Positions 2,660 through 34,519 of a stretch of DNA of 64,000 nt are shown one piece after another (position 1 is the first letter of the stretch; the number at the start of each line of letters is the position of its first letter). A program made the position numbers and the translations under genes. The notes under the pieces were generated by a model. It was not told the DNA's origin. It worked only from the letters and a program-made list of their open reading frames with translations, and did no database searches. The DNA is taken from positions 1-64,000 of the IMG/VR virus record IMGVR_UViG_3300036760_000522, one strand, 5' to 3'.

Positions 2660-2706
2660 AAAAATAATTGGTTGACACCGTTTGGTCTCGGGTTCATTGG
2701 AGCCCT
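2660..2706 (+). promoter_or_regulatory. putative cas-operon promoter carrying a PAM-flanked self-target site
   Basis: AT-rich AAAAATAATTG followed by perfect TTGACA (2672-2677); -10 not clearly recognisable; TTC (2693-2695) + ATTGGAGCCCT (2696-2706) is identical to the first 11 nt of the spacer at 9358 and overlaps the GGAG RBS of the GTG at 2707. Confidence 0.6.
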
Positions 2707-3333
2707 GTGAAAAAACTGCGATATTCGAAAGCCTGGGAAATACGTGTCAGCGGAAATCACGCTCTTTATACCCGGGCGGATTTTCAAGCGGAGCGTGTCA
2801 GTTACGATACCCCTACGCCACCGGCTATGGCCGGGATGCTTGAATCGATCCTGTGGCGTCCAGGTTTCAACTGGCGTGTCAGTGAGATTCTCGTCCTGAA
2901 CCCAATTCAGTGGACCAACCTCACTCGAAACGAGGTCAAAGAGATCACGTTTAGTAAGGGCTACGTCGATCTGGATCAGCAACACACACAACGACGATCC
3001 AGAATCCTCGTCAACGTTGATTGGATCGTGAAAGCCAAACTCGTAACAAGCACGGAAACACCTATACCAGAACTCCGAAAAATGGAGGCAATGGCCGAAC
3101 GGTATTTGGCTAACGGGAAATGCAACCACAGACCGTTCTTGGGTTGTAGAGAGTTTCCAGCAAAGGTCCGTCTAGTGAATGGGTCCGAGACTCTACCAAG
3201 TCCGGTCGACATCACGCGGCAGTTGGGCAGGATGCCACACAGCTACCGTTGGGTTCAGGACGTTCGAGCTGAGGTTTTCATGTTCGATGCCGAACTGAAT
3301 CGTGGTCGGCTCGTCGTTCCGGAGGTCGCATGA
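2707..3333 (+). CDS. cas5: type I-C Cas5 (Cas5c/Cas5d)
   Basis: ALYTR...ERVSYDTPTP.A..G.LESILWRP...VLNPI...RNEV and PFLGCREF signatures; GTG start at 2707 preferred (ORF track starts at TTG 2668). Confidence 0.92.
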   Translation: MKKLRYSKAWEIRVSGNHALYTRADFQAERVSYDTPTPPAMAGMLESILWRPGFNWRVSEILVLNPIQWTNLTRNEVKEITFSKGYVDLDQQHTQRRSRILVNVDWIVKAKLVTSTETPIPELRKMEAMAERYLANGKCNHRPFLGCREFPAKVRLVNGSETLPSPVDITRQLGRMPHSYRWVQDVRAEVFMFDAELNRGRLVVPEVA

Positions 3334-5024
3334 TCCTGGAAGCCCTTTGGGCCTACGCCCAAAAAGCACGTCTTGTTCCCAACGAGTACATGGCGCAAAC
3401 GGCGGGCCTCACTGTCGACCTAAACAAGCAAGGGGCCTTTCGAAGCGTCACCGCCAATAGGTTTTCAGTCGACGCCCCAACCCCCGTTCCTGCCAAACGG
3501 CCGGGTACGACACCTAAGCCATATCTGTTGGACCACGTTGGTTACGTGCTTGGATTGGGGACCGATCCGAACAAGCTAGCCCGGCGCAAAACACAACAGC
3601 GAGCCTACAAGGCATACGTTACTGACCTAGCAGAAACCGTCAAAAGTCTGCGACCGGTTGCCAAATTCTTGTCGGGACCTGTACCCAAGGAAATCAAGCA
3701 GCTGAAATGTGCGGATCACATCAAGGTGGCCTTCACCGTCAACGGCAAGTCGATCTACAAAGATTCAGGACTCAGAGCGCACTATCGCAGTCTGCGCAAG
3801 GAGACATCCCCTACGGAGACTTGTCGAATCACCGGCAAGCCTTGCACGCCAGGTTTTTTTCCACTCTTCAAAAACCTTCCAGGATCCAAAGGTTCAAACC
3901 TGATTACCTTCGAGGAGAAGGCGTGGCAATTTGACGGACGAGACTCTAGCAGGTGCTACCCGCTCTTGCGCGAGATTCGTGAGGGTGTTGCAGCTGCCTG
4001 GAACCATCTCACCGAACCAGCAGAAAAGGCGTTTTGGAATCGACGTTCAGCGTTCGTCCTTGAACGATCCAAAGGTACAGAAAAAGACGACAAGTCGAAG
4101 CCTTTGGCGATTTGGTGGACGTTAGCAGATGTTGATCTTAGTCCACTGCAACGCGTTGTGGAAGGACCTGTTTCCGGCAAGCCCTATCGGGAATTTATGG
4201 ATCAGGCTTTCCTCGATCTCTCAGCACTAGAGGTTGAGGGGGACCTATTTGTCTTGGTGGCACAATCGTACGACTCGTGTCCCGGACGTATTTCCGTTCT
4301 GGATTGGTTGGTCGTGCCCCTGAGAAAAGTCGCAAGCAACCTACGACAATTTCGAACTGAAACGGGCAATGCGACGCTGCGACGATTGTGTCGAAGCTCT
4401 CCGAGTTACCTAGTAAGTCAGGCCCTCTTGCGAGCCGCCTTGGTGGGAGAGGATTACCCGCCAGGTGTCATCCGAGAGCTGACTCGTCTAAACAACCAAC
4501 GTTGGCCGGATACTAACGGGCTAGCACCAGGACCTCTACTCACCGGCGTCACAGCCAAACTAATTGGAAAAGGAAATCACATGAACAACGGAAAAGATCT
4601 GGAAGAAGAAAGAGACAACCCATTCCACACGACGGACCCAAATTTTTGGGGCGGCTGTTTGGTAGCTCTGGGTAACCACCTACTGGCTGCTAATGGTGTT
4701 GGTGGGAACTTGGACGCACAACTTGACTCGATCAGCACTCAGCCAGGAAAATACTTTCCGAAGTTCGACGGCAAGGTCCGACGCGCGATCACACGACTCC
4801 GCAAGGCTCCGGTTGAGGAAAAACCCGAGATCCATACGGCCATCTCACACTACGACAGCTCGTACGTCAAGTTCGTACAGGACAGCAGCAAAGGCATCGT
4901 ACCACTGCGTTTGAGCGGCACAGAGTCTCTCGCTTTTCGACGTGGGTATGTCTTGCAGCAGCGAAGCCTAAGAGTCAACAAGGCCAAAACAGCGGAGAAA
5001 CCAGAGAAATTATCAGGGACATAA
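3330..5024 (+). CDS. cas8c: Cas8c (Csd1)-like large subunit, divergent
   Basis: MILEALWAY N-terminus, CRITG motif followed by LITF.E.AW, C-terminal AFRRGY..QQ; lies between cas5 and cas7. Confidence 0.8.
   Translation: MILEALWAYAQKARLVPNEYMAQTAGLTVDLNKQGAFRSVTANRFSVDAPTPVPAKRPGTTPKPYLLDHVGYVLGLGTDPNKLARRKTQQRAYKAYVTDLAETVKSLRPVAKFLSGPVPKEIKQLKCADHIKVAFTVNGKSIYKDSGLRAHYRSLRKETSPTETCRITGKPCTPGFFPLFKNLPGSKGSNLITFEEKAWQFDGRDSSRCYPLLREIREGVAAAWNHLTEPAEKAFWNRRSAFVLERSKGTEKDDKSKPLAIWWTLADVDLSPLQRVVEGPVSGKPYREFMDQAFLDLSALEVEGDLFVLVAQSYDSCPGRISVLDWLVVPLRKVASNLRQFRTETGNATLRRLCRSSPSYLVSQALLRAALVGEDYPPGVIRELTRLNNQRWPDTNGLAPGPLLTGVTAKLIGKGNHMNNGKDLEEERDNPFHTTDPNFWGGCLVALGNHLLAANGVGGNLDAQLDSISTQPGKYFPKFDGKVRRAITRLRKAPVEEKPEIHTAISHYDSSYVKFVQDSSKGIVPLRLSGTESLAFRRGYVLQQRSLRVNKAKTAEKPEKLSGT
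4581..5024 (+). CDS. cas11: putative Cas11 small subunit from an internal in-frame start in cas8c
   Basis: AAGGAAATCAC-ATG at codon 418 of cas8c; 147-aa product resembles the helical Cas8c C-terminal/Cas11c region. Confidence 0.6.
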   Translation: MNNGKDLEEERDNPFHTTDPNFWGGCLVALGNHLLAANGVGGNLDAQLDSISTQPGKYFPKFDGKVRRAITRLRKAPVEEKPEIHTAISHYDSSYVKFVQDSSKGIVPLRLSGTESLAFRRGYVLQQRSLRVNKAKTAEKPEKLSGT

Positions 5025-5069
5025 ATCGTCCTTGTCGGTAAAACAAAACCAACACGAATGGAAAATCAA

Positions 5070-5945
5070 ATGGCGACAGCTAAGAAAACAACACAGGTAC
5101 CCGCATTGGACGGGATCATCGTTCCAGAAACCGTCAACGCAAATCAAAACGGGGATCCAGATGACGGGGGCAATCCTCGTCGCAACGCCGTGACAGACAA
5201 AGGGCTCTGGTCACGTGAAAGCATCAATCGACGGATCCGGGATTACGTCTACGACGTTCACAAAGGTAAACCCGGGTTCGATTTGTTCATCAAACGAGGC
5301 AATGTCCACGAGACACTGATCCGGGAAGCGTACGTGAGTTCCGGAGCAGGAATCGACAAGGGCAGAGACTACGCTAAGGGCAACCTTGCGTTGTGTGAAA
5401 AGTATTTCGACGTGCGGTGGTTCGGACTTGTAGTCACCAAACCTGGTGACGGTGGGATCCGAGGGCCAATTTGCATAAATATTGGTGAATCTGTCTACCC
5501 TATAACGCACGAAGACATGGCGGGTACGAGACAAACTCGGACGAACGAAGAACGTGCCAAAACTGGCAGTCGGGAAATGTCCCACAAGCGGTTCATTCCG
5601 CACGCGGTTTTCACGATTACCTGGCACCTCGATCCGTTTTACGCACAACGAACCGGGTTCGACAAGAACGACTTGGAAATCTTCCTAGACGCGATTACAC
5701 GTGTCTTCAGGAACGATCACTCGTCTATGAGGGGGCGAATCAACCTCCGGTACTCGGTCGTGTTTGAGCACGAGGAGCCTACCCGCAATGCCGAGCCGTG
5801 TGATTTGTTCGAGCTCCTCAAAATCAAGGCAAAGGATCCGCATACGGCTTCGCAATGGTCGGACTACACCGTGACCTTACCGACGGCCAAAGATCTGCCC
5901 GCCGGTGTAACGATGAAAATCCTGCACGCAACGAAGGCTGCTTGA
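5070..5945 (+). CDS. cas7: type I-C Cas7 (Csd2)
   Basis: NANQNGDPDDGGNPR, R.IRDY, YFDVRWFG, GIRGPI.I motifs; alternative start at 5058. Confidence 0.92.
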   Translation: MATAKKTTQVPALDGIIVPETVNANQNGDPDDGGNPRRNAVTDKGLWSRESINRRIRDYVYDVHKGKPGFDLFIKRGNVHETLIREAYVSSGAGIDKGRDYAKGNLALCEKYFDVRWFGLVVTKPGDGGIRGPICINIGESVYPITHEDMAGTRQTRTNEERAKTGSREMSHKRFIPHAVFTITWHLDPFYAQRTGFDKNDLEIFLDAITRVFRNDHSSMRGRINLRYSVVFEHEEPTRNAEPCDLFELLKIKAKDPHTASQWSDYTVTLPTAKDLPAGVTMKILHATKAA

Positions 5946-6011: not shown

Positions 6012-8345
6012 ATGGAATTTCACGATTACCAAGCTGTTACCTTGGCCGACGCCTGTAACACAGATTGGAAATCTTACTACGTTTTGTGGGCAATGGCAGC
6101 CGGGAAAACGGCGTTTTGCCACGCTTACCTCAAGTGGGCTTTCGAGTGTGACGTCTATGACCACGCAGTAATCCTAACGCCCTACAAAACCACAAGGGAC
6201 GGATTCGTCACCCGTAAACTGGATGATGAGCGCCGCATCTTGTACGTCAGCGATCTGAAATACGACGTGAGAAAGGACCTGGTACGCCCGCTAGAATCGG
6301 ACTCAATCGCAGAGCTTCGTGAATACCTGCGCACACCAAAGCCTGGCTACGCTGTGGTAATTTGTGACGCCACAGCAAGAGCCTTCGTCCAAACGGGGGC
6401 TGACCAGAACGAACGCCTCATAGTAATTGGCGACGAGTGTCATGGCCATCAAGCCCCCGCGATGAGATCATGGGTAAACGCAATTCGAAGCCGCGGAGCA
6501 AAAACCATCAGTCTAACCGCAACACCCTATCGTCACGACAACGTCCCTGTATTGCCTCCACCAGGCACTAAGGGGGTTCGGTTGGGCCCAGTCCGCACGT
6601 ACACCGAGCAGGTACGGGACGGCCTGGCGCCCGACATCACGTTGAAGTGTATTCCTGTGGCCTGTGCAAACGCTATCAATGACGACGAACGCTTTCAGGA
6701 GATGGCTGCGGCAATCGTGGCTAATTGGTCACCAGATCGCAAAGCCATGGTTCAAATTACACCACGGGCTGCTGGTTGGAGCGGGCGCGAGGAGGACGAA
6801 CTGAACGAAGTCCAGAAAACTTTCTGCAACCAATTTCGATGTCGCATCATTGAAGCTCTCCAAAAGGCCAAGATCAGGTGCGTCGACATGACCGACTTTG
6901 AGGAGCACGACGGCTGTCCGCAGAACTATCAAGAGGTGTTACTCGCGGAACGTAAGGTCAGACATTTCAAGGACTCAAAGGTGGACGTCTTTATTGGGAT
7001 CAACAACATATCCCTAGGTGTTGATTGGACATTGTGTAACACAGTAATATCTACAGATTTTATGAGTTCCTTGTCTCGGATGGTTCAATTCAGTGGTCGA
7101 GGAGGTCGAAACAAAAAGGATTTCCTGTCATATCCGAATAGGTATCTAGACCAGATGGAGTTTTTGGTCTTGACACCTGTCAAGCGCGAAAACGAGGATG
7201 CTGTACGAATCCGGGAGATGGCTCGTCACGCCGTACTGCTGTCACTGACACTCTCTCAGTTGACACTTCCAGCAGGTTTGACAGGTTACACCGCCATCCA
7301 ACGGAGATTGCGTGAGATCCATGCCCCAAAGATTGCCACGGAGCTGCGAGACCACCTTGGAAGACGCGATCACTTGACTAAAGTCCACGCGAATACCGTC
7401 GTTGTCCTCTCTGATCAGTGGGGGCGAATCAAGGTAAAGAACCTCAGAGTATTACTCCTTCGACAACAACGGCAGCAGTATCCAGACGAGACCCCGGAGC
7501 AGAGACAACATGCTGTCGACGCGGCCATACAAGAGCTAGTGTCAGCTCAAGTGGATCCCGGACAGATCGAGAAAGCAGTAGCTTCTATCCCACTACAAGA
7601 AGGGACAACTCTCCGATACGTATTCGAGGAGTTGGTCAAGTGGTTCAACGACGAGTATATTGACGTTCGAATCAATCCGTTTCTCCGCAATGCAAGAGAA
7701 TTTGTTACTGAGTTCTACCCGGATACTTGCGACAATGTATTTCGCCGCCTCCGAGAGCTGCAACAAGAGGCTCTGGATCCGACAATCGTATGTGACTGGG
7801 CAATTGCCTTTTACAAAGAGCACGACAGATGGCCCGAGGCAGGCCCCATTCAGGAAGCACCGCACGTCTCCTGGGGGGATGTCAATCAAGCTCTCCTCCA
7901 CGGGACACGAGGGTTACCGCGGCTCCCCAACGGACTGTTGCAATTCCTCGGTGAATGGGCCCACAACCACAAACAGGTCCTCAGGGTGTTCTCGAGAGTC
8001 TTCCACGATATCCACCAGGACAACTCCACGGAGACGGAGTGGCGGCCTGTACTGAGCGCCCTAGGCATTCCAGGAACAGACAATATCCACGAAGCCTTTT
8101 TGCAATACGATCGTGCGCGATTGTCCTCCAGAGTCTACTTTGGTGAGCGGGAGCAAGCCGGATTCGAAGCAGCCATGTCCCACGTGGTGAAACACATTCA
8201 GCTGTTCCATTTCTTGCGGCTCTTCACGAAGGCTTTCTACAGTCGCCAGGGCTCGCATTGGAACTTCTGGTGGACAATTGCAGAAGCCCAGCGCCACGAC
8301 ACAGCTTTGACTATCAGACAACTCCGAAACCTTGCGAGCGGTTAG
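6012..8345 (+). CDS. Cas-associated SF2 (DExH) helicase lacking an HD nuclease domain
   Basis: Motif I AMAAGKT near residue 27, II DECH, III TAT, VI QFSGRGGR; no room for an N-terminal HD domain and no HD motif recognised; GGAG RBS before ATG 6012. Confidence 0.85.
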   Translation: MEFHDYQAVTLADACNTDWKSYYVLWAMAAGKTAFCHAYLKWAFECDVYDHAVILTPYKTTRDGFVTRKLDDERRILYVSDLKYDVRKDLVRPLESDSIAELREYLRTPKPGYAVVICDATARAFVQTGADQNERLIVIGDECHGHQAPAMRSWVNAIRSRGAKTISLTATPYRHDNVPVLPPPGTKGVRLGPVRTYTEQVRDGLAPDITLKCIPVACANAINDDERFQEMAAAIVANWSPDRKAMVQITPRAAGWSGREEDELNEVQKTFCNQFRCRIIEALQKAKIRCVDMTDFEEHDGCPQNYQEVLLAERKVRHFKDSKVDVFIGINNISLGVDWTLCNTVISTDFMSSLSRMVQFSGRGGRNKKDFLSYPNRYLDQMEFLVLTPVKRENEDAVRIREMARHAVLLSLTLSQLTLPAGLTGYTAIQRRLREIHAPKIATELRDHLGRRDHLTKVHANTVVVLSDQWGRIKVKNLRVLLLRQQRQQYPDETPEQRQHAVDAAIQELVSAQVDPGQIEKAVASIPLQEGTTLRYVFEELVKWFNDEYIDVRINPFLRNAREFVTEFYPDTCDNVFRRLRELQQEALDPTIVCDWAIAFYKEHDRWPEAGPIQEAPHVSWGDVNQALLHGTRGLPRLPNGLLQFLGEWAHNHKQVLRVFSRVFHDIHQDNSTETEWRPVLSALGIPGTDNIHEAFLQYDRARLSSRVYFGEREQAGFEAAMSHVVKHIQLFHFLRLFTKAFYSRQGSHWNFWWTIAEAQRHDTALTIRQLRNLASG

Positions 8346-8524
8346 GTGCTGCGACTAGGTCCTTAACCGCTCGCAAGGCGGCTTTGTTCTTTGAAAACTC
8401 ACGACATTTTCACTTCCGTTCACCTGTAGATGGTGAACGGAAGGACGCCATTCTGTTCTCTGCAAGACAACCTCTCGCAATCCACACTGCAAAACCTCGA
8501 TAAAACAGTCTTTAGTGACGAAGG
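8346..8524 (+). promoter_or_regulatory. CRISPR leader
   Basis: Non-coding, relatively AT-rich segment between helicase stop and the first conserved repeat. Confidence 0.65.
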
Positions 8525-9283
8525 GTCGAGACAGGGACCAAGGTCCCTGATGATTTCAACGACATCACCAGCGGCATGCTGCTCGCTGCCCCGGAGTCGA
8601 GACAGGGACCAAGGTCCCTGATGATTTCAACCAACGGACCGATCAAGACCTCTGGTAACGCCATCAGGTCGAGACAGGGACCAAGGTCCCTGATGATTTC
8701 AACGACCATGTTCGGAGAGGACGATGACGCTGTTCGCGGTCGAGACAGGGACCAAGGTCCCTGATGATTTCAACAACCCAGCCGGCGACGGTGGCGGCCC
8801 CGCCATGAACTGGTCGAGACAGGGACCAAGGTCCCTGATGATTTCAACACAATAACGCGGAGCAGATGAATGTCACAATTAGTTGGTCGAGACAGGGACC
8901 AAGGTCCCTGATGATTTCAACTCTGAGTTGAGTCCGCATATGTAGTCACCTACTTCGTGTCGAGACAGGGACCAAAGTCCCTGATGATTTCAACATGGAG
9001 GTCCTATGTTCGTTGATAACAATTGCACCGGGTCGAGACAGGGACCAAGGTCCCTGATGATTTCAACTCAGCGTGGCGACCAAGGAACGGACCTTACAGG
9101 TTGTCGAGACAGGGACCAAGGTCCCTGATGATTTCAACACTGGACGACCCCGCCGGCGCGCGACTCCACCATCAGTCGAGACAGGGACCAAGGTCCCTGA
9201 TGATTTCAACATGCCTGATCGCGTGCACGACTCCTCAGTAGGGGGATGTCGAGACAGGGACCAAGGTCCCTGATGATTTCAAC
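8525..9283 (+). CRISPR. CRISPR array, conserved block: 11 repeats GTCGAGACAGGGACCAAGGTCCCTGATGATTTCAAC (36 nt), spacers 35-38 nt
   Basis: Repeats start at 8525, 8596, 8668, 8739, 8813, 8886, 8959 (one substitution), 9032, 9103, 9175, 9248; stem CAGGGACC/GGTCCCTG followed by 11-nt ATGATTTCAAC. Confidence 0.98.
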
Positions 9284-9346
9284 GCGGCGAGCCGGCCCGG
9301 CGTCACGCGCCACAAGATCGATCAAAAACAGAGGCCTAAGCCTCTG

Positions 9347-9409
9347 ATGATTTCAATATTGGAGCCCTAACCCACGCGATATACGAGATTCCATTGTCCA
9401 GCAAGCAGG
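9347..9409 (+). ncRNA. candidate cas-regulating crRNA 1 (handle + spacer after first variant repeat)
   Basis: Spacer nt 1-11 (9358-9368, ATTGGAGCCCT) identical to 2696-2706 next to a TTC PAM. Confidence 0.65.
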
Positions 9410-10088
9410 GATGTGACAGGAGCCTTGGCTCCTGATGATTTCAACCCAGAGGCCCCTGGCGGTTTGGATGGACCCGAACTGACATGTGACAGGAGCCTTG
9501 GCTCCTGGTGATTCCAACAAGACAGGTGCTTAGGCACCTGATGATTTCAACGGAGTGCGCGTCGTTGCACAGCAGACCGAGGTGCTCGGATCGAAACAGG
9601 GACTCAGTCCCTGATGATTTCAACTTGTCCACCGGTGCATCCCAATGCACCGGTGCCGGAGCTTCAGCTCCTGTTTTTGACTCGTCAAGAACAGCGTTGA
9701 AGCACCTGATGGTTTCAATTCTTGTACCGATCCTGGCTTCACTAGAACGACAGCAGGACGTGACAGGAGCCTTGGCTCCTGGTGATTCCAACATGAGCGC
9801 CGCCTCGATGCGATCCTCAACGCCTTCAAAACGACAGGAGCTTCAAGGCTCCTGATGATTTCAACACACTGCACAGCGAGTCCTCGACAGCATTGGCATC
9901 GCCTCAAGACAGGGGCTACAAGACTCCTGATGATTTCAACACTCAACAACAGGTGGCAGAACGAGGCCTCTCGTATACAGGTGCTTAGGCACCTGATGAT
10001 TTCAACCAAAGCGCCCGGTCCATCGGGATGCACTGCGCCTTCAACTGGAACGGTGATTGTGTATGAAGCAAGAGCAAAAAAGCCCCTG

Positions 10089-10134
10089 GGGATTTCAATA
10101 TTGGTGCCCTATCGTGTTTGGTATGAAAAGTCTA
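10089..10134 (+). ncRNA. candidate cas-regulating crRNA 2
   Basis: Spacer from 10100 (ATTGGTGCCCTAT) matches 2696-2708 except at positions 6 and 12. Confidence 0.55.
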
Positions 10135-10985
10135 GTCAGTAACAGGGGTTCAACCCCTGATGATTTCAACTCGTATCGATGGTATGTCGAACTTGAGCGG
10201 GCAAAATCAGGAGCTTAAGCTCCTGATGATTTCAACAAAGGCAAAGTCGATCGAGAGACTACTGTGCCAAAATCAGGGGATCAATCCCCTGATGATTTCA
10301 ACATCGACAAGCAGGGATTCACCGGAGCGTTGCTGGTTGTCGGTCCAGGGGCTAGGTCCCCTGATGATTTCAACGCGCAGACCATCGACGGCGTAATCGA
10401 AGAGCTCTCGGTCAGAGACAGGAGCTTCGGCTCCTTGGTGATTACAACAAATGCACACCGGCCGGTCTTGTCGGCGCCCCGTCAGTAGCAGGGGTTCAAC
10501 TCCCCTGATGATTTCAACCAGCCCGAAGCTCTAGAGGACGAACTCGCGGCGATGACAGGAAACAGGGACCTTGGTCCCTGATGATTTTAACGTTGAGAAA
10601 CCAGGGCTGTTCCTTCAGCTTGGCCTGTCGAAACAGGGACTCAGGTCCCTGATGATTTCAACATCAAAAGCTCAAAGGCTTGACGGACTTCGTGGGGATC
10701 GAAACAGGGACTCAGGTCCCTGATGATTTCAACCTCTACGGGATATCGGCCATCCGAGATCGCCAAAAAACAGGAGCTGAAGCTCCTGATGATTTCAACT
10801 ACCAATCGTGTTCGTCGAGAGCCCCCAAGATCGAAGACAGTCAGGGGCTTAGGCTCCTGATGATTTCAATAGCACAGTGGACGGGCGCGACGCTGTTGGT
10901 GTACTATCTGGTCATCGGTATCTTGTCGAGATATTGTGCCTTTCGGCTGTGGCCAGATAGCTGACTTGGAGGAGGCCCCACGAAA

Positions 10986-11354
10986 ATGAACGAAGAAATC
11001 GATGCGATGTACTTACAGCACTGCCCTCATTGTGCGGGGGTGCATGTCGAACCCGTCCAACTTCCTGAGCCGCAAACGGCACGAAGACTTGCGTGCGGGA
11101 ATTGTCACTTCACGGCGGAAGAGGAACAATTTCGGGAGTACCAAAAGGCACGAATAAGGGAGTCCGAGCTACTGGCGCATTGCCGGGAGCAGTACGAGAC
11201 GTTGGTTCTTTTCGACAGAGTCGTCGATGTTGAGCCCTTACCTGCTGAGTGGTGTGAGGTGATCGACACATACCATCGCAAATGTGTCGCAGCTCGAGAG
11301 GAAGCTTTCTTCAGTAGCTTCGACAGTGCGATGTCGGTCCAGAATCGAGTTTGA
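10986..11354 (+). CDS. zinc-ribbon hypothetical protein
   Basis: CPHC...CGNC; GGAGG upstream; stop inside the repeated element. Confidence 0.65.
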   Translation: MNEEIDAMYLQHCPHCAGVHVEPVQLPEPQTARRLACGNCHFTAEEEQFREYQKARIRESELLAHCREQYETLVLFDRVVDVEPLPAEWCEVIDTYHRKCVAAREEAFFSSFDSAMSVQNRV

Positions 11355-11375
11355 ACCCGTCAGATGTTGAGAGGT
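11346..11375 (+). repeat. dispersed 30-bp element, copy 2
   Basis: 29/30 identical to 1727-1756. Confidence 0.9.
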
Positions 11376-11419: not shown

Positions 11420-11450
11420 GTTTGAACCCGTCAGATGTTGAGAGAATAAT
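11420..11450 (+). promoter_or_regulatory. dispersed element copy 3; sigma70-like promoter upstream of RHH gene
   Basis: TTGAAC-17 nt-AATAAT (11422-11450). Confidence 0.55.
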
Positions 11451-29707: not shown

Positions 29708-32700
29708 GTGGCACGGTTAAATTCAACAGCAATAGCGGGGTATTACCCGACTCCGGAACATCTAATTCCGAGGATTGCGAAACACCTTCGTGTGATTGAG
29801 TCCGATCAATGGTCGGGGGCGTGCGCTAGGTGGATGGATCCGTGCGCAGGTGATGGGGCTCTGATTTGTGATCTCGTTACTCGAGTGATGGATCAACCGG
29901 GCAAGGCAGGGCTCTACCTTTGTGAGCTTGAGAAGGAACGCGCTGAACGTTGCAAGGCCAAAGTCTATGAACTGTTCGGCTGGAAAGCTCAACAACAAGT
30001 TTTGCACGGGGACGCCTTTCACACGACTTTTGATGACGGTGACTGTGAAATCCTCTATCTGAATCCGCCGTATGATTTCGATCCGAAACACGTCCGTTTG
30101 GAGCAGAAGTTCCTTTCACGCTTCACGCAAGCGTTGCGACTCGACGGCGTGCTCGTCTTTGTTGTCCCGCATTATGCGCTTTCGGCTAGCGCTGAGCTTC
30201 TGGCCAAGGAGTACAAGGATCTCGTTTGTCTGAGATTTCCCGATCCTGACTACGCCACCTTCAAACAAGTTGTTGTGTTCGCCAGACGGTCGCGTCGTTT
30301 CGAACCGGATCCTGTGGTCGTTGCTCGCGTTCAAGCGTGGGCAGACTCAGTGGAGGGACTGCCCATTCTGGGGGAGACGTCGGCAGTCTACGAAGTCAAA
30401 GGGACGATGTACACAACAACGTGGAAGGTCCAAGAGTTGGATCTGCACGCTCTTGTCGCTAAGGCCCGCCCGTGGCACCAGACGACCCGTGAAGGGCTTC
30501 TTCCAGTTCCCCACACTCTGCCAACGACTCCCCCAGAGTCGCTCCTCTGGAGGCGTTACACGCTGGCTACTCCCCCTAGACCGGCGCACATCGCGAGCGG
30601 CCTCGCTACGGGTCTTTTCAACGGGCTTCGGATCAAGCCCGACACTGACACATCCGGGCTACCCGACCTCTTGGTCAAGGGGACTTTCGAACGAGAGTTC
30701 GTGCCTGTCGAGGATCGGCTTGACGCGGACGGCGTAATCATCGGCGCCGTGGAAGTTGAACGACCTCGGTTAAGTGTGACCTGCCTCAACCTGACAACGG
30801 GCACCTACCAGGAGTTGGGGACGCCTGGGAACCCTACGCTTGGTGACCTCTTGGCGAACTATCGCCAAAGCCTCATGGCTCAGATGCGACACCAATGCCC
30901 AGTCTTGTACGACCCGCAGGATCCCCCTGTTGTCACACTCAAGCCTGTCAGGCGGAAGCTGTACAAAGCTCAGGAGCACTCAGCCAAAGCGATCTTGAAA
31001 TTGCTTGAGCAACGCGAGACGAACCGATCAGCTATTTTGCTTGGCGAAATCGGCAGCGGCAAGTGTCTAGGTTTGGGCACCCTCGTGCTCAAATATGATG
31101 GGACACGCACACCTGTGGAGAGTATTCGTAAGGGGGATTTGTTGATGGGGCCCGACAGCAAGCCTCGCAAGGTTTTGAATACGACTAAAGGGACGGGTTC
31201 TCTTTACAAAGTTGTACCTGTTACTGGGGATTCTTGGATCTGCAATGACGCGCACATTCTGACTCTCGTACACACGATGAGTGATGAGATTTTTGACATA
31301 CCGTTAGCGCGTTATCGCAGTGGCCGCAGACTCAATTTGCGCTTGCGAAATGGACAGACTTCGCGAAGAACTACACATCCTGTTGAAGAGTTCAAGCAGT
31401 TCTTCCCGGAAAACGGAGTTGATTTTCCGGCTCAGGTAGTCACACCATTAGTTGATCCTTACTTTTTAGGTGTGTGGTATGGCGACGGGACTAAATTTAG
31501 TCTAAACGGGGTCAGTCGTTCTGTCGAAGTCACAACGGCGGACCAGGAGATCTTGTCGCTGTTGTCTACGATAGCCTCACAGTACAACTTGAAAGTCAGA
31601 GCCCGTAAAAATTCCAATCCCGACAATAAGGCGACCACTTACGCGCTCACTGTTGGGAACAGAGTCACAAAGAAGCCGTGGGCACACACGAGGGGTAACA
31701 GACCTAATCAACTTCTGCGACAGTTACAGGTATTGTACAAGGACGGGTTCCATCTGCCGCAAGAATATTTGACAGGCAGCCGTGAAGTGCGGAGAGCGTT
31801 TCTTGCGGGGCTGTTGGACTCAGACGGGTATCGGAACGGCCCTGGCGTTTTCGATTTCATTCAAAAGAAGCGAGAGTGGTCCGAAGACGTTTGCTTCTTA
31901 GCTCGTTCTCTAGGTATCAGGGCCACACTACGGAAGACAAGAAAATCCGCTTACCGTGGCGTTGCGGGTGACGTGTACTGGCGGGTCACCATGAGTGGGG
32001 ACTTTTCTGATTTGCCTTTACGTATTCCTCGTAAGCAAGGGCCAATGAGAGCTGCGGTGCGAAAGAATCGAGCCGGGGAGCCGAGTTACCGTCGCACGAA
32101 ACATGTAAGCCGCACGGGCATTCGTATTGGATCGATTGGCCTGGGTGAGTACGCAGGCTTCGAATTGAGTGGTGATGGACGGTTTTTACTAGGGGACTTC
32201 ACAGTCACACACAATACGAGCACGGTTTTAGCTGTCGCAAAAACGATCGCCAAAACTGTGTTCGTCATGTGTCCTCCGCACTTGCTCGACACGTGGAAGA
32301 ACGAGATCAAAGCGAACGTGCCGGAAGCACGTGTGCGTGTTTTGAAGACGATCGACAGTGTGAACCGTTTCGCTGAGGTCGTTGTTGAAAAGCCTCAGCT
32401 CACGATTGCGATCGTGTCGCGTGAGAGTGCCAAACTTGGCCACGGTTGGGAAGGTGTGGGCTCTGCATGTCCCAAGTGTGGCGCTGCAACGCCTGATACA
32501 GATTTAGCTCGGAAGCGCGCTCATTGCGAAGCTGTCGAAGTTCGTGCAGAGGACAGTCTCGCAAAGATGGCTGTTTCACTGGCTGCAACATTGTCTCGAT
32601 ACGCACCTAACCACTCAACGGTTCGAGCCTTGTTGAAGGGGCGTCATTGGTCACGGATTTTGACACATCGTGTAGCCAAAGCGAGTCCGCCTGCTTGGAG

Positions 32701-34519
32701 TGGTATTGAGCTGGAATCACTGACTGAGATTTTTGATCAGATTTTGATCAACCCCTCGGAGGACGGAATTCGTCTCTTTTTTAGGCTCTTGGCTGCGATC
32801 AAAAATCCAGCGGAGATCATACCGGATTTGGTGCGAAAGACTAAGGCGTGTATTGAAGCAAGCCCATATGCTTACCGCTTGGATTCTGTGGAGCGTGTGT
32901 TGGGGCTTTTCCTGCCACCAAACTCCGACCTTCAACGCTTTCTCGGTTTCAAGTTTTGGGATCACGATTTGGAGGCTATCGTGTCGACTGGTGTGTCGAC
33001 CGTTGGTGGTCGCCTTTGTTGGGCTGGGGGCACTCTCTTTTGTGATGACCGTCAAACAGGCTCTGTCGAGGCTGCCCTTGCGCTGCTTGACGAATTGATG
33101 TCTCAAGGCAAATTCACCATGTCCGATCCGTGTGGTGAGCCGTTGTTTGGTGCGTCAGCTCCGCGTCGTTATTCGTTGTCGAAGTATGTCGTCAGACATC
33201 ATCCGGATCTTTTCGATCTATTGATCCTAGACGAAGGGCACGAATACAGTAAAGCGGATACGGCCCAAGGATCGGCCGCACACAAGCTGATACAGCTTGG
33301 GATCCCGACCATTTTGATGACAGGGTCCCTCATGAACGGCTACGCACGAAGTCTGTTCATGAACCTGTGGAGTCTGTCGCCTGAGTTTCGACGCGAGTTC
33401 AATCGAAGCGACTTGCCACGGTTCGTGGATCGTTACGGTTACCGCAAGCGACTGATTGTCGAGGAGCAGGGGGAAGTTGTTGCCTACGGCTCTGTGTCGG
33501 ATCGTGTCGTGCGTGGAATCAAAATGCTCGGTGACGCACCAGGGGTCTTGCCGCTTCTCCTGTTCCGTCACCTCTTGCCGATCAGTGTGACGTTACACAA
33601 ATCGGACCTCGCTCTTGAGTTACCACGCTCAGAACTTCGACAGGTGCTCATTGATCCTGATCCTGCGACGAAGGCAAAGTACGACTTGTTGGTGCAAAGC
33701 CTCATGTCACAAATTAAAAAGGATCAGTTCGATGAGAAGCGCTCCGGGAAGCTCTTTGGTGCTCTAGCTGAGATCCCGAGCTACCTAGATCGCGCCACGT
33801 CGGACACAGGGAACACAGATTACGGGGACTACGAGATCCGATACCCTGCGAGCATTGGCGCTGAACTGGTTGCGTCAGCGCCAGCAATACCCGAGAGCGC
33901 CCGTCTCACCAAAGAAACTTGGCTGCTTGATACAGTTCAACAAGAACTCGACGAAGGGCGTCGAGTTCTTGTATTCTCGTGGCACACGTGCTTGTTACCG
34001 CGTCTTGCTCGGATCCTGTCCGAACACATCATGGAGCCCGTCCAGGTCCTTTACGCGGACAAGGTTCCGACCGGGAAACGTCAGCAGTGGATCGACACCA
34101 AGGTTGTCAAGAGGGACGTCCGCGTCATGGTCGCGAACCCGCTGACGGTACAAACAGGGCTCAACAATTTGGTACACTTCGCGACAGAGATCTGGCACGA
34201 GAACCCTGCGTGCAACCCGCTCATTTTCCGCCAGGCCATCGGTCGAGTGGATCGGATTAATCAGACCCTTGAGACCAGGATCCTGGTCCCTGTGTACCGA
34301 GGCACGATGCAAGAGACCGTCTACGATCTTTTGCTGCATAAGGTCGCCACGTCGACAGCCACCGATGGTGTGGACCCCTCAGCAGCGCTCATGGCGGTTG
34401 GTGGCGTCGAGGAAAACTATTCGGCGGGGCTCAGCCTCGGACGGGAGTTGTGGTCGGCGTGGACGCGGGGTGCCGGCGCGTCTCTAGTTCAAGCGCAGCG
34501 CGAAAAGCGGTCTGCTTGA
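29708..34519 (+). CDS. DNA methyltransferase-SF2/SNF2 helicase fusion containing an intein
   Basis: DPCAGDG (SAM motif I), NPPY (amino-MTase motif IV), GEIGSGK(T), DEGH, C-terminal QTGLN...QAIGRVDR. Confidence 0.85.
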   Translation: MARLNSTAIAGYYPTPEHLIPRIAKHLRVIESDQWSGACARWMDPCAGDGALICDLVTRVMDQPGKAGLYLCELEKERAERCKAKVYELFGWKAQQQVLHGDAFHTTFDDGDCEILYLNPPYDFDPKHVRLEQKFLSRFTQALRLDGVLVFVVPHYALSASAELLAKEYKDLVCLRFPDPDYATFKQVVVFARRSRRFEPDPVVVARVQAWADSVEGLPILGETSAVYEVKGTMYTTTWKVQELDLHALVAKARPWHQTTREGLLPVPHTLPTTPPESLLWRRYTLATPPRPAHIASGLATGLFNGLRIKPDTDTSGLPDLLVKGTFEREFVPVEDRLDADGVIIGAVEVERPRLSVTCLNLTTGTYQELGTPGNPTLGDLLANYRQSLMAQMRHQCPVLYDPQDPPVVTLKPVRRKLYKAQEHSAKAILKLLEQRETNRSAILLGEIGSGKCLGLGTLVLKYDGTRTPVESIRKGDLLMGPDSKPRKVLNTTKGTGSLYKVVPVTGDSWICNDAHILTLVHTMSDEIFDIPLARYRSGRRLNLRLRNGQTSRRTTHPVEEFKQFFPENGVDFPAQVVTPLVDPYFLGVWYGDGTKFSLNGVSRSVEVTTADQEILSLLSTIASQYNLKVRARKNSNPDNKATTYALTVGNRVTKKPWAHTRGNRPNQLLRQLQVLYKDGFHLPQEYLTGSREVRRAFLAGLLDSDGYRNGPGVFDFIQKKREWSEDVCFLARSLGIRATLRKTRKSAYRGVAGDVYWRVTMSGDFSDLPLRIPRKQGPMRAAVRKNRAGEPSYRRTKHVSRTGIRIGSIGLGEYAGFELSGDGRFLLGDFTVTHNTSTVLAVAKTIAKTVFVMCPPHLLDTWKNEIKANVPEARVRVLKTIDSVNRFAEVVVEKPQLTIAIVSRESAKLGHGWEGVGSACPKCGAATPDTDLARKRAHCEAVEVRAEDSLAKMAVSLAATLSRYAPNHSTVRALLKGRHWSRILTHRVAKASPPAWSGIELESLTEIFDQILINPSEDGIRLFFRLLAAIKNPAEIIPDLVRKTKACIEASPYAYRLDSVERVLGLFLPPNSDLQRFLGFKFWDHDLEAIVSTGVSTVGGRLCWAGGTLFCDDRQTGSVEAALALLDELMSQGKFTMSDPCGEPLFGASAPRRYSLSKYVVRHHPDLFDLLILDEGHEYSKADTAQGSAAHKLIQLGIPTILMTGSLMNGYARSLFMNLWSLSPEFRREFNRSDLPRFVDRYGYRKRLIVEEQGEVVAYGSVSDRVVRGIKMLGDAPGVLPLLLFRHLLPISVTLHKSDLALELPRSELRQVLIDPDPATKAKYDLLVQSLMSQIKKDQFDEKRSGKLFGALAEIPSYLDRATSDTGNTDYGDYEIRYPASIGAELVASAPAIPESARLTKETWLLDTVQQELDEGRRVLVFSWHTCLLPRLARILSEHIMEPVQVLYADKVPTGKRQQWIDTKVVKRDVRVMVANPLTVQTGLNNLVHFATEIWHENPACNPLIFRQAIGRVDRINQTLETRILVPVYRGTMQETVYDLLLHKVATSTATDGVDPSAALMAVGGVEENYSAGLSLGRELWSAWTRGAGASLVQAQREKRSA
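31064..32215 (+). mobile_element. intein (384 aa) with LAGLIDADG homing endonuclease
   Basis: Starts CLGLGT directly after Walker A Lys, ends VTHN, Thr+1; FLGVWYGDG and FLAGLLDSDG motifs. Confidence 0.92.

What the first reader, a model, noticed from the sequence alone, without database searches (positions are those of the whole stretch)
9284..10870. About 22 CRISPR repeats with covarying stems and a fixed handle: a structure-encoded array that repeat finders would miss
Seen: after 11 near-identical repeats, stems change by compensatory pairs: CAGAGGC/GCCTCTG (9322), CAGGAGCC/GGCTCCTG (9410, 9483, 9757), CAGGTGC/GCACCTG (9519, 9971), CAGGGGTT/AACCCCTG (10135), CAGGAGCT/AGCTCCTG (10201, 10764), CAGGGGAT/ATCCCCTG (10267), GGAGC-TTCG-GCTCC (10411), CAGGGAC/GTCCCTG (9590, 10556, 10627, 10698). 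The 5' 7 nt are almost free, while the CAG..CTG stem base and ATGATTTCAAC are nearly invariant; only units ending 9719 and 10099 have broken stems. Random trailer-end decay would break pairing. Inference: selection keeps each unit processable by Cas5c while removing identity between repeats, locking a fixed guide set against recombinational deletion, i.e. a hard-wired guide or regulatory library.
Basis: partly seen in the sequence, partly recalled or inferred. Interest (0 to 1): 0.9.

Follow-up and report, generated by a model that had tools for sequence, protein, structure and literature searches.

The report
Phage CRISPR array with covarying repeats
In a 301-kb phage genome, the last two-thirds of a CRISPR array are 22 repeats that differ from one another in sequence but keep the same hairpin and 11-base tag; related phages show the same pattern, so these look like old guides that still work, and standard array finders overlook them.

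Summary
After 11 canonical 36-nt repeats (8525-9283), 22 more units follow (9322-10870). In them the 11-nt tail ATGATTTCAAC is 94% conserved and the CAG/CTG stem base 94-98%. The 5' flank and loop are only 40-49% conserved, and the upper stem changes by compensated pairs. Sixteen of 22 units keep all seven lower pairs, against 2.4 expected if the 3'-arm changes were placed at random.

The array belongs to the type I-C variant already described in huge phages: Cas5c, Cas8c and Cas7, an SF2 helicase in place of Cas3, and no Cas1/2/4 found. The conservation pattern matches what published Cas5c biochemistry needs for cleavage.

Arrays with the same covarying, heterogeneous repeats occur in three other elements carrying this system (Cas7 36-50% identical). 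Ordinary I-C arrays have identical repeats.

The most likely cause is that repeats are rarely re-homogenised by spacer acquisition. They therefore drift independently under purifying selection for processing and loading.

Neighbouring units are no less alike than random pairs, there are deletion scars, and 11 identical repeats are present. No spacer target was found.

I rate it a new variant of a known kind.

The parts
2668..3333 (+). Cas5c (the pre-crRNA endonuclease family of type I-C). The real start is probably 2707.
   Evidence: TIGR01876 1e-32, PADLOC Cas5c 2e-40. PDB I-C Cas5 8g9s 1e-29. The Logan gene call starts at 2707.
3330..5024 (+). Cas8c/Csd1 large subunit, a single ORF here
   Evidence: PF09709 9e-20, PADLOC Cas8c 3e-23. 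It is split into two ORFs in L036, L087 and L089.
5058..5945 (+). Cas7/Csd2 backbone subunit
   Evidence: PF05107 5e-56. 50%, 39% and 36% identical to Cas7 of L036, L087 and L089.
6012..8345 (+). SF2 helicase in the place of Cas3. No HD nuclease domain was detected.
   Evidence: Only Helicase_C and ResIII hits. No Cas3 model hit in Pfam, NCBIfam or PADLOC, and no PDB hit. 29% identical over 700 aa to the helicase that follows Cas7 in L087. The same gene order occurs in L089 and L090.
8330..8393 (+). Strong terminator-like hairpin plus T-run overlapping the helicase stop codon. It separates the cas operon from the array.
8394..8524 (+). Leader, with the motif ACCTCTCGCA at 8470-8479, 45 nt before the first repeat
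   Evidence: The same 10-mer lies next to both arrays of L087, and with one insertion next to the L036 array. It is not enriched elsewhere in the window.
8525..9283 (+). Canonical block: 11 repeats of 36 nt (8-bp hairpin plus 11-nt tail) and 10 spacers of 35-38 nt
9284..10870 (+). Variant tract: 22 units, each a different hairpin on a conserved CAG/CTG base followed by ATGATTTCAAC. Periods are 64-75 nt for 18 of the 22 intervals.
   Evidence: The covariance model finds all 22 (30.9-51.8 bits). The hairpin is predicted in local context (P>=0.57) for 18 of 22.
9483..9551 (+). Spacerless junction: the unit ending at 9518 abuts the unit ending at 9551 (33-nt period). This is a deletion or recombination scar.
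9658..9680 (+). Terminator-like hairpin (GGAGC/GCTCC followed by TGTTTTTG) inside an over-long 59-nt 'spacer'. Probably a decayed repeat. It could attenuate transcription into the distal units.

Best explanation
The tract is the older, leader-distal part of a real CRISPR array. The array belongs to a huge-phage type I-C variant: Cas5c, Cas8c and Cas7, plus an SF2 helicase instead of Cas3, with no adaptation genes in reach.

Proposed working, by analogy with type I-C:
1. The array is transcribed from the leader at 8394-8524.
2. Cas5c recognises each hairpin base together with the 3' tail and cuts after the G of CUG.
3. Each guide then starts with AUGAUUUCAAC and ends with the next unit's 5' flank and hairpin.
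4. Cas7 and Cas8c assemble on the guide, and the helicase acts downstream without an HD nuclease.

Why the repeats differ: spacer acquisition is rare in this lineage, so the repeats are not re-copied from the leader-proximal repeat. Each one drifts on its own. Purifying selection keeps only what processing and loading need, namely the tail, the three base pairs at the stem base, and pairing of the upper stem.

The units diverged from an ancestral CAGGGGC/GCCCCTG hairpin by single compensated steps, some through G-U intermediates. The 11 identical leader-proximal repeats are a recent expansion of one derived stem type (GGGAC/GTCCC).

Shown: the anatomy, the covariation, the site-specific conservation, and the recurrence in relatives. 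Inferred: transcription, Cas5c cleavage, Cascade loading, and the mode of interference.
For: Site-specific constraint:
- handle 94% identical to the canonical repeat
- stem base 94-98%
- upper stem 54-60%, but paired
- loop 40%, 5' flank 49%
The handle-versus-flank contrast gives p = 4e-25.

Covariation. Six stem types each differ from GGGGC/GCCCC by one compensated pair. Wobble intermediates are present in units 10870 and 9940. Outside the three broken units, G-U outnumbers A-C by 10 to 2 on the + strand.

[quoted passage not shown] Cas5c leaves an 11-nt 5' handle (PMC8524198).

System type: and PMC7162821.

No I-C Cas4, Cas1 or Cas2 by tblastn in the window, L021, L035, L036 or L087. None appears in the gene lists of L089.

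Baseline: about 15 ordinary I-C arrays of up to 116 repeats have identical repeats, with only the last one degenerate.

Recurrence in relatives:
- L084/L087 upstream array: 25 units, 18 distinct
- L087 downstream array
- L036: about 9 units, all different
- L089: 10 units
Over 63 distinct units, 93.2% of cells are paired against 82.8+-0.8, and 46 doubly changed cells are seen against 8.0+-2.5.

The consensus stem of the window's variant units equals the main repeat stem of L087.
Against: There are no expression or processing data.

A terminator-like hairpin at 9658-9680 lies upstream of 17 of the 22 units.

No protospacer was found for any spacer, so current guide function is unproven.

The stem types are interleaved rather than ordered by age. 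Canonical-like units sit at 9624 and 10591-10733, and two units (9518, 9792) share a derived handle. Rearrangement or import of units must therefore also have occurred.

The 11 identical repeats imply recent acquisition, although no Cas1/2/4 was found. About 228 kb of the genome could not be inspected.

The Cas5c catalytic residues were not verified.

The clade-level alignment was fitted to the model, which favours the structure.

The middle of the tract rests on one assembly only.
Confidence: 0.65

Rival explanations
1. Repeat divergence is itself selected, because non-identical repeats cannot recombine. This freezes a fixed guide set (a hard-wired regulatory or exclusion library) in a phage that cannot replace lost spacers.
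For: Only 6 of 231 pairs of variant units share 20 nt or more of exact identity, so the substrate for recombination is in fact largely gone. No adaptation genes and no nuclease were found. The same array style recurs in four lineages.
Against: Neighbours are not less alike than random orderings. Near-identical neighbours persist (10662/10733). Deletion scars are present (9518/9551, and the 42-46-nt periods in L084). Eleven identical repeats are tolerated at the leader end. Drift without homogenisation, plus survivorship of units whose flanks had already diverged, gives the same picture without positive selection.
Confidence: 0.15
2. A mosaic built by recombination. The tract was assembled from pieces of several diverged arrays, either a second array of the same genome or arrays of co-infecting relatives. 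The pieces were joined at the conserved tail, so the compensated differences arose between lineages and not in place.
For: Stem types are interleaved. GGAGC occurs at seven scattered positions and GGGAC at 9624 and 10591-10733. Units 9518 and 9792 share a derived handle (GTGATTCCAAC) and 33 nt. There is a spacerless joint at 9518/9551. L087 carries two arrays with different stems (CAGG/CCTG and CAAG/CTTG) flanking one cas operon.
Against: Every stem type is exactly one compensated step from a single ancestor. That fits star-like divergence in place better than import from distant sources. No other array with this handle exists in the three collections searched. This rival still requires selection on the hairpin, so it modifies the main explanation rather than replacing it.
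Confidence: 0.25
3. A dead trailer. The distal units are non-functional remnants. The apparent compensation comes from DNA-level correction of quasi-palindromes (template switching within hairpins), not from selection on RNA.
For: Two units are broken (9719, 10099). A terminator-like hairpin lies inside the array. No targets were found. In L036 the distal units have short stems and decayed handles.
Against: Template switching cannot keep an unpaired 11-nt tail 94% conserved while the adjacent 5' flank falls to 49%. The last five units are all intact. The bias towards G-U over A-C on the transcribed strand points to constraint at the RNA level. The pattern matches the Cas5c determinants.
Confidence: 0.05
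4. Decoy RNAs. The variant units act as repeat mimics (RNA anti-CRISPR style) that soak up a host I-C Cas5c or Cascade, rather than serving as guides for the phage's own complex.
For: Phages do encode repeat mimics (PMC10651486). A solitary unit also exists elsewhere in this genome.
Against: The units are spaced like a normal array, with spacers of normal length. They directly continue a canonical array next to the phage's own intact Cascade genes. No host array with this handle was found among 185,579 species representatives.
Confidence: 0.03

Closest known systems
Type I-C (Dvulg) CRISPR arrays processed by Cas5c/Cas5d
   Same: A 7-8-bp hairpin followed by an 11-nt 3' tail ending in AAC. Homologues of Cas5c, Cas8c and Cas7. 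Spacers of 35-38 nt. The parts conserved here coincide with the published cleavage determinants.
   Different: Ordinary I-C arrays have identical repeats with one degenerate terminal repeat. Here 22 of 33 differ. No Cas3 HD nuclease and no Cas1/2/4 were found.
Type I-C variant of huge phages (Al-Shayeb et al. 2020, PMC7162821)
   Same: Lacks Cas1 and Cas2. Has a helicase instead of Cas3. Its Cas5 is closest to Cas5d. The genome is a phage genome over 200 kb.
   Different: In the passages I read, that paper describes the genes and reports compact phage arrays (median six repeats). It does not mention heterogeneous, covarying repeats. Whether this phage also carries a Cas12j system was not checked.
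Degenerate terminal (trailer-end) repeats of CRISPR arrays
   Same: Divergence lies at the leader-distal end, and some units (9719, 10099) are truly broken.
   Different: The extent is 22 units rather than 1-2. The divergence is structured: the tail and the pairing are kept, and the last five units are intact.
Atypical repeats flanking special guides in CRISPR-associated transposons (type I-F3), known to me from the literature
   Same: Repeats that differ in sequence from the array consensus yet still yield usable guides, which are kept for a fixed purpose.
   Different: There, one or two atypical repeats mark a homing guide next to Tn7-like genes. Here a whole tract is atypical and no transposition genes are seen. 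I did not test this comparison.
Standalone repeat-like elements, mini-arrays (crRNA-like RNAs) and RNA anti-CRISPRs (10.1101/2023.03.03.530964; PMC10651486)
   Same: This is the relevant comparison for the solitary unit 3.4 kb upstream of the window: a single repeat-like hairpin plus tail outside the array.
   Different: The main tract is a long array contiguous with canonical repeats, not a mini-array. No partial match to a cas promoter was found for the solitary unit's spacer.
Engineered non-repetitive guide arrays (own knowledge) and TIGR arrays, which lack repeat sequence conservation (10.64898/2026.09.09.750476, abstract seen)
   Same: A functional guide array that is defined by structure or motif rather than by repeat identity. 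It needs motif-based or covariance-based detection.
   Different: The first is synthetic and the second is an unrelated system. Here the array is a natural CRISPR-Cascade array.

Membership tests
CRISPR array (general) | Short direct repeats regularly interspaced by unique spacers of similar length | tested here: met
   33 units. Periods are 71-74 nt in the canonical block and 64-75 nt for 18 of 22 variant intervals. Spacers are unique.
CRISPR array (general) | Repeats nearly identical within the array | tested here: not met
   Met for the 11 canonical repeats only. The 22 variant units average 69% ungapped identity to the canonical repeat and 63% to each other. Control I-C arrays show 0 mismatches.
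Type I-C CRISPR-Cas | Cas5c, Cas8c and Cas7 genes adjacent to the array | tested here: met
Type I-C CRISPR-Cas | Repeat forms a hairpin followed by an 11-nt 3' tail (the future 5' handle) | tested here: met
   An 8-bp stem plus an 11-nt tail in the canonical repeat. Twenty of 22 variant units keep a hairpin abutting the tail: 18 have a perfect stem of 6 bp or more, and 9940 and 10448 are imperfect. Architecture as described in PMC8524198.
Type I-C CRISPR-Cas | Cas3 helicase-nuclease with an HD domain | tested here: not met
   The 777-aa helicase matches no Cas3 or HD model and no PDB entry. The function of its C-terminal roughly 350 aa is unknown.
Type I-C CRISPR-Cas | Adaptation module Cas1-Cas2-Cas4 | tested here: not met
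   No Pfam, NCBIfam or PADLOC hits among the flanking ORFs. tblastn with Cas4, Cas1 and Cas2 from ordinary I-C loci finds nothing in the window, L021 or L035. About 228 kb of the genome was not inspected.
Type I-C CRISPR-Cas | Cas5c catalytic residues (Tyr/Lys/His triad of the Bha and Smu enzymes) | tested here: inconclusive
   Counting along the alignments, the position I took for the Tyr is Leu here, as it is in the 8g9s Cas5 chain. The Lys/His pair could not be placed from those alignments.
Huge-phage type I-C variant (PMC7162821) | Lacks Cas1 and Cas2, has a helicase in place of Cas3, has a Cas5d-like Cas5, and sits on a phage genome over 200 kb | tested here: met
   (circular 301.4 kb).
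Huge-phage type I-C variant (PMC7162821) | A second CRISPR system with Cas12j in the same genome | not tested
   Only 73 kb of the 301 kb was accessible.
RNA anti-CRISPR / solitary repeat units | Repeat mimics of a host system, carried without cognate cas genes | tested here: not met
   The phage's own Cascade genes are adjacent. No host array with this tail was found in genome contigs.
Regulatory mini-array (crRNA-like RNA) | One or two repeat-like units whose spacer partly matches a cas or cargo promoter | tested here: inconclusive
   This applies only to the solitary unit (L021 5998-6033, minus strand). Apart from its own locus, the only seed match is 11 nt at about window 22425, with about 0.035 expected by chance.

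The most novel reading that the evidence does not exclude
A clade of huge-phage Cascade-helicase systems that lack an HD nuclease and an adaptation module carries long-lived, vertically inherited guide arrays. In these arrays the repeats are defined by structure (hairpin plus 11-nt tail) and not by sequence. Such arrays would be a natural counterpart of engineered non-repetitive guide arrays. The phage would use them as a stable guide set to silence host or rival-phage genes. Repeat divergence would then help keep the set intact, and phage arrays reported as 'compact' would be systematically under-counted.
Probability: 0.2. Interest if true: 0.85.

Novelty: new variant of a known kind. Interest (0 to 1): 0.68.

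Why it matters
Repeat identity is treated as a defining property of CRISPR arrays, and the usual detection tools depend on it. This result matters in four ways.

1. It shows that an array can stay under functional constraint while its repeats lose identity. That reads out in vivo which repeat features Cas5c and Cascade need, and it agrees with the in-vitro mutagenesis.

2. It implies that arrays of phage systems without adaptation genes may be longer and older than reported, because detection stops at the canonical block. Here 11 of 33 units would be found, and the public annotation calls ORFs in the rest.

3. It provides 20-plus natural hairpin variants on one shared handle. These could serve as parts for recombination-resistant multiplex I-C arrays.

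4. It makes a standing question testable: what do phage Cascade-helicase systems without a nuclease do, and are their guides fixed?

Tried and rejected
- **Exact-handle array searches.** Two copies of CTGATGATTTCAAC at array spacing were searched in the viral, metagenome and genome collections. Only this contig is a true hit. L038, L039 and L085/L086 are coding or other tandem repeats.
- **Single-unit pattern in IMG/VR.** The 31 other hits fall into about 12 distinct chance matches in coding sequence, without real hairpins.
- **Strain comparison.** The Logan contigs L035 and L041 are 100% identical to the window, so they give no independent strain for comparison. They break at the array. ORFs inside the tract are on record only in the JGI assembly.
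- **Spacer targets.** None in INPHARED phages or PLSDB plasmids; the plasmid search gave one chance-level hit at E = 0.2. No self or cross matches in the window or in L021, L035, L036 or L087. Two IMG/VR scans with every sixth base free found only the array itself.
- **Rfam.** No family reached its threshold in the window.
- **Word-based homology search with the helicase.** It found only the query itself. The exhaustive HMMER search found the family. Some members (L091-L094) are not linked to Cascade.
- **Upstream ATPase (1762-2409) as a system component.** Rejected, because it is not conserved in L036 or L087.
- **Spacer-to-spacer similarity.** Only weak resemblances, for example 9793 with 10007, and 9358 with 10100 (shared start ATTGGnGCCCTA). 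This gives no evidence that the tract is a segmental duplication.
- **Whole-tract partition-function folding.** It timed out and was replaced by folds in local context.
Full report
**Where the window comes from**

The window is bases 1-64000 of IMGVR_UViG_3300036760_000522, a 301,550-bp viral contig. Its last 127 nt repeat its first 127 nt, so the contig is circular. The part I could read carries inteins, methyltransferases and many ORFs without family matches, and no tRNA genes.

**The cas locus**

Upstream of the array, on the + strand, lie:
- Cas5c (2668/2707-3333)
- Cas8c (3330-5024)
- Cas7 (5058-5945)
- a 777-aa SF2 helicase (6012-8345)

The three Cascade proteins match type I-C models. 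The helicase matches no Cas3 or HD model and no solved structure.

No Cas1, Cas2 or Cas4 was found among the flanking ORFs. tblastn with Cas4, Cas1 and Cas2 taken from ordinary I-C loci found nothing in the window or in the 9.4 kb before it. About 228 kb of the genome was out of reach.

**Checking the observation**

A terminator-like hairpin closes the helicase gene (8330-8393) and a 131-nt leader follows. Then come 11 canonical 36-nt repeats (8525-9283): an 8-bp hairpin CAGGGACC/GGTCCCTG followed by ATGATTTCAAC. After them come exactly 22 further units, ending at the coordinates listed in the observation check.

Identity of the 22 variant units to the canonical repeat, region by region:

| Region | Identity |
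|---|---|
| 11-nt tail | 94% (228/242) |
| Stem base, 5' side | 94% |
| Stem base, 3' side | 98% |
| Upper stem | 54-60% |
| Loop | 40% |
| 5' flank | 49% |

The contrast between tail and flank gives p = 4e-25.

With the hairpin imposed on the MAFFT alignment, 92.0% of cells pair against 84.4+-1.2 in shuffles. Four of eight pairs carry double changes, and sliding the partner by one to three columns drops pairing to 28-52%.

I also kept the observed 5' arms and scattered the observed 24 3'-arm substitutions at random. That gives 2.35+-1.21 fully paired stems, with a maximum of 8 in 20,000 trials. Sixteen are observed.

Many units are copies of one another. The number of independent compensated events is therefore nearer six than fifteen: GAGGC, GGAGC, GGTGC, GGGAC, GGGGT and GGGGA, each with its complement.

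Four of these six are transition pairs reachable through G-U. Wobble intermediates are present in units 10870 and 9940. Outside the broken or shifted units, G-U outnumbers A-C by 10 to 2 on the + strand. This is weak support for constraint at the RNA level on that strand.

- Units 9940 and 10448 are imperfect, and 10374 and 10518 have 6-bp stems.
- The 5' 7 nt still show descent from GTCGAGA.

Folded in local context, 18 of the 22 units have a hairpin probability of 0.57 or more. Canonical units range from 0.27 to 0.99.

**Is this unusual?**

Yes. In about 15 ordinary I-C arrays from IMG/VR loci, with up to 116 repeats, every repeat is identical and only the last one is degenerate.

Tandem Repeats Finder stops at 9213. 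Rfam has no match. The JGI annotation places ORFs inside the tract.

**Relatives**

No other array with this exact tail exists in the three collections. Relaxing the tail, and following the helicase family, led to four more elements with the same gene order. All five share Cas7 followed by the helicase; Cas5c and Cas8c are also seen wherever the contig reaches them, while L090 starts just upstream of Cas7. No adaptation genes were seen in the flanks that were searched or have gene calls.

| Element | Cas7 identity to window | Array(s) |
|---|---|---|
| L036 | 50% | about 9 units on the minus strand upstream of cas5, each with a different stem, tail AGGRTTYCAAC |
| L084/L087 (182-kb viral contig) | 39%; helicase 29% | upstream array of 25 units, 18 distinct, tail intact in 21; second array after the helicase with a CAAG/CTTG stem base |
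| L089 | 36% | 10 visible units with three stem families: CAGGGGATC, CAGAGGAG and CAAGGGATC, each with its complement |
| L090 | Cas7 followed by the helicase | no array on its 4.6-kb contig |

Over 63 distinct units from these elements, 93.2% of cells pair against 82.8+-0.8. There are 46 doubly changed cells against 8.0+-2.5, and six of eight pairs covary. That alignment was fitted to the model, which favours the structure.

The consensus stem of the window's variant units, CAGGGGC(T)/(G)GCCCCTG, is the main repeat stem of L087. So that stem is probably ancestral, and the window's 'canonical' GGGAC stem is a derived type that expanded recently.

A leader motif, ACCTCTCGCA, sits 45 nt before the first repeat in the window. 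It also lies beside both L087 arrays, and with one inserted base beside the L036 array. It is not enriched elsewhere in the window. This supports the + orientation and the homology of these arrays.

**Mechanism**

Published work on Cas5c shows the following (PMC8524198):
- Cleavage occurs at the 3' base of the hairpin and leaves an 11-nt 5' handle.
- It is not blocked by changes in the loop or the 5' overhang.

That is the pattern of conservation and freedom seen here. I therefore infer that the variant units are still recognised and cut, and that their guides are still loaded.

The simplest evolutionary reading has two parts:
1. Spacer acquisition is rare, so repeats are not regularly re-copied from the leader-proximal repeat. 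They drift independently.
2. Purifying selection retains the tail, the stem base and the pairing.

**Testing the 'locking' idea**

Four results argue against it:
- Neighbouring units are not less alike than random orderings. Mean longest shared run is 13.2 nt against 11.9, and the probability of a value this low or lower is 0.94.
- Near-identical neighbours persist (10662/10733).
- There is a spacerless joint at 9518/9551, and very short spacers occur in L084.
- The 11 leader-end repeats are identical.

Loss of recombination substrate is real: only 6 of 231 pairs share 20 nt or more. It is explained as a by-product or a survivorship effect.

Stem types are interleaved, and two separated units share a derived tail. 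Some rearrangement or import of units has therefore also occurred.

A dead-trailer model with hairpin-templated DNA correction cannot explain the conserved unpaired tail.

**What remains open**

- Nothing shows transcription or processing.
- A terminator-like hairpin at 9658-9680, probably a decayed unit, lies upstream of 17 of the 22 units.
- No spacer has a detectable target in the phage and plasmid databases, in two IMG/VR scans, or in the accessible parts of these genomes.
- The interference mode of the helicase is unknown.
- The Cas5c catalytic residues were not verified.
- The source of the 11 recent units is unknown.

**Novelty**

The system type is known. In seven full-text searches and the passages I read, I found no description of arrays whose repeats covary within a single array, nor of this as a trait of the phage I-C variant. 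I rate it a new variant of a known kind.

Noticed in passing
L021 5998-6033, minus strand (= L035 1528-1563, minus strand); about 3.4 kb before window position 1 on the circular contig: A solitary repeat unit: CAGGGG..CCCCTG hairpin plus the exact tail ATGATTTCAAC, scoring 47.3 bits with the covariance model. About 3.5e-5 chance matches to the search pattern are expected in a genome of this size. It lies about 30 nt inside the called start of a 187-aa ORF that has a HEMGH motif and no Pfam hit. It could be a Cas5c cleavage site in that mRNA or a crRNA-like regulator. Away from its own locus, its 'spacer' has only an 11-nt seed match, at about window 22425.
   Followed up: partly
window 8470-8479; L087 5503-5512, 5582-5591, 13633-13642 and 14760-14751 (minus strand); L036 7336-7326 (minus strand): The 10-mer ACCTCTCGCA is conserved in the leaders of arrays from three phages. 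It is not enriched elsewhere in the window. It is a candidate promoter or regulator site specific to these arrays.
   Followed up: partly
window 9658-9680: A terminator-like hairpin plus T-run on the + strand, inside an over-long 59-nt 'spacer'. It looks like a repeat whose tail decayed into a U-tract.
   Followed up: no
window 9483-9551: Two repeat units abut without a spacer (33-nt period). L084 has similar 42- and 46-nt periods. These are scars of spacer deletion or of array recombination.
   Followed up: partly
window 11349-11373 and 11420-11444: A perfect 25-nt direct repeat, 71 nt apart, just after the 122-aa zinc-ribbon-like ORF. It overlaps two promoter-like hexamer pairs. It is unrelated to the CRISPR repeat.
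   Followed up: no
L037 (Ga0114919_10126893) 1528-1662: Two hairpins of about 20 bp. Each is built from the exact tail ATGATTTCAAC, a CAGGTCAAT stem and the reverse complement of the tail, so the tail is sequestered in a long stem. This may be coincidence or a repeat-derived element in another genome.
   Followed up: no
window 3330-5024; L036 8049-9745; L087 8130-9940; L089 1554-3325: Cas8c is one 564-aa ORF in the window. In the three relatives it is split into a large ORF (403-439 aa) and a small one (150-187 aa). In L036 and L087 both pieces match the Csd1 model.
   Followed up: partly
window 6012-8345, about residues 600-680 of the helicase: A segment of about 65 residues matches up to 14 tandem copies in hundreds of otherwise unrelated proteins. 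It is therefore a repeat-type domain appended to the helicase. Other members of the helicase family (L091-L094) sit next to methyltransferase or acetyltransferase genes, not Cascade genes.
   Followed up: partly
window 29708-34519 and 60101-62737: Large ORFs interrupted by intein / LAGLIDADG homing-endonuclease domains. One of them is in a DUF6094 methyltransferase-like protein.
   Followed up: no
window 9441-9794 (minus strand) and 10264-10488 (plus strand): The public JGI annotation-aa and 74-aa genes inside the variant tract. These are almost certainly spurious.
   Followed up: yes
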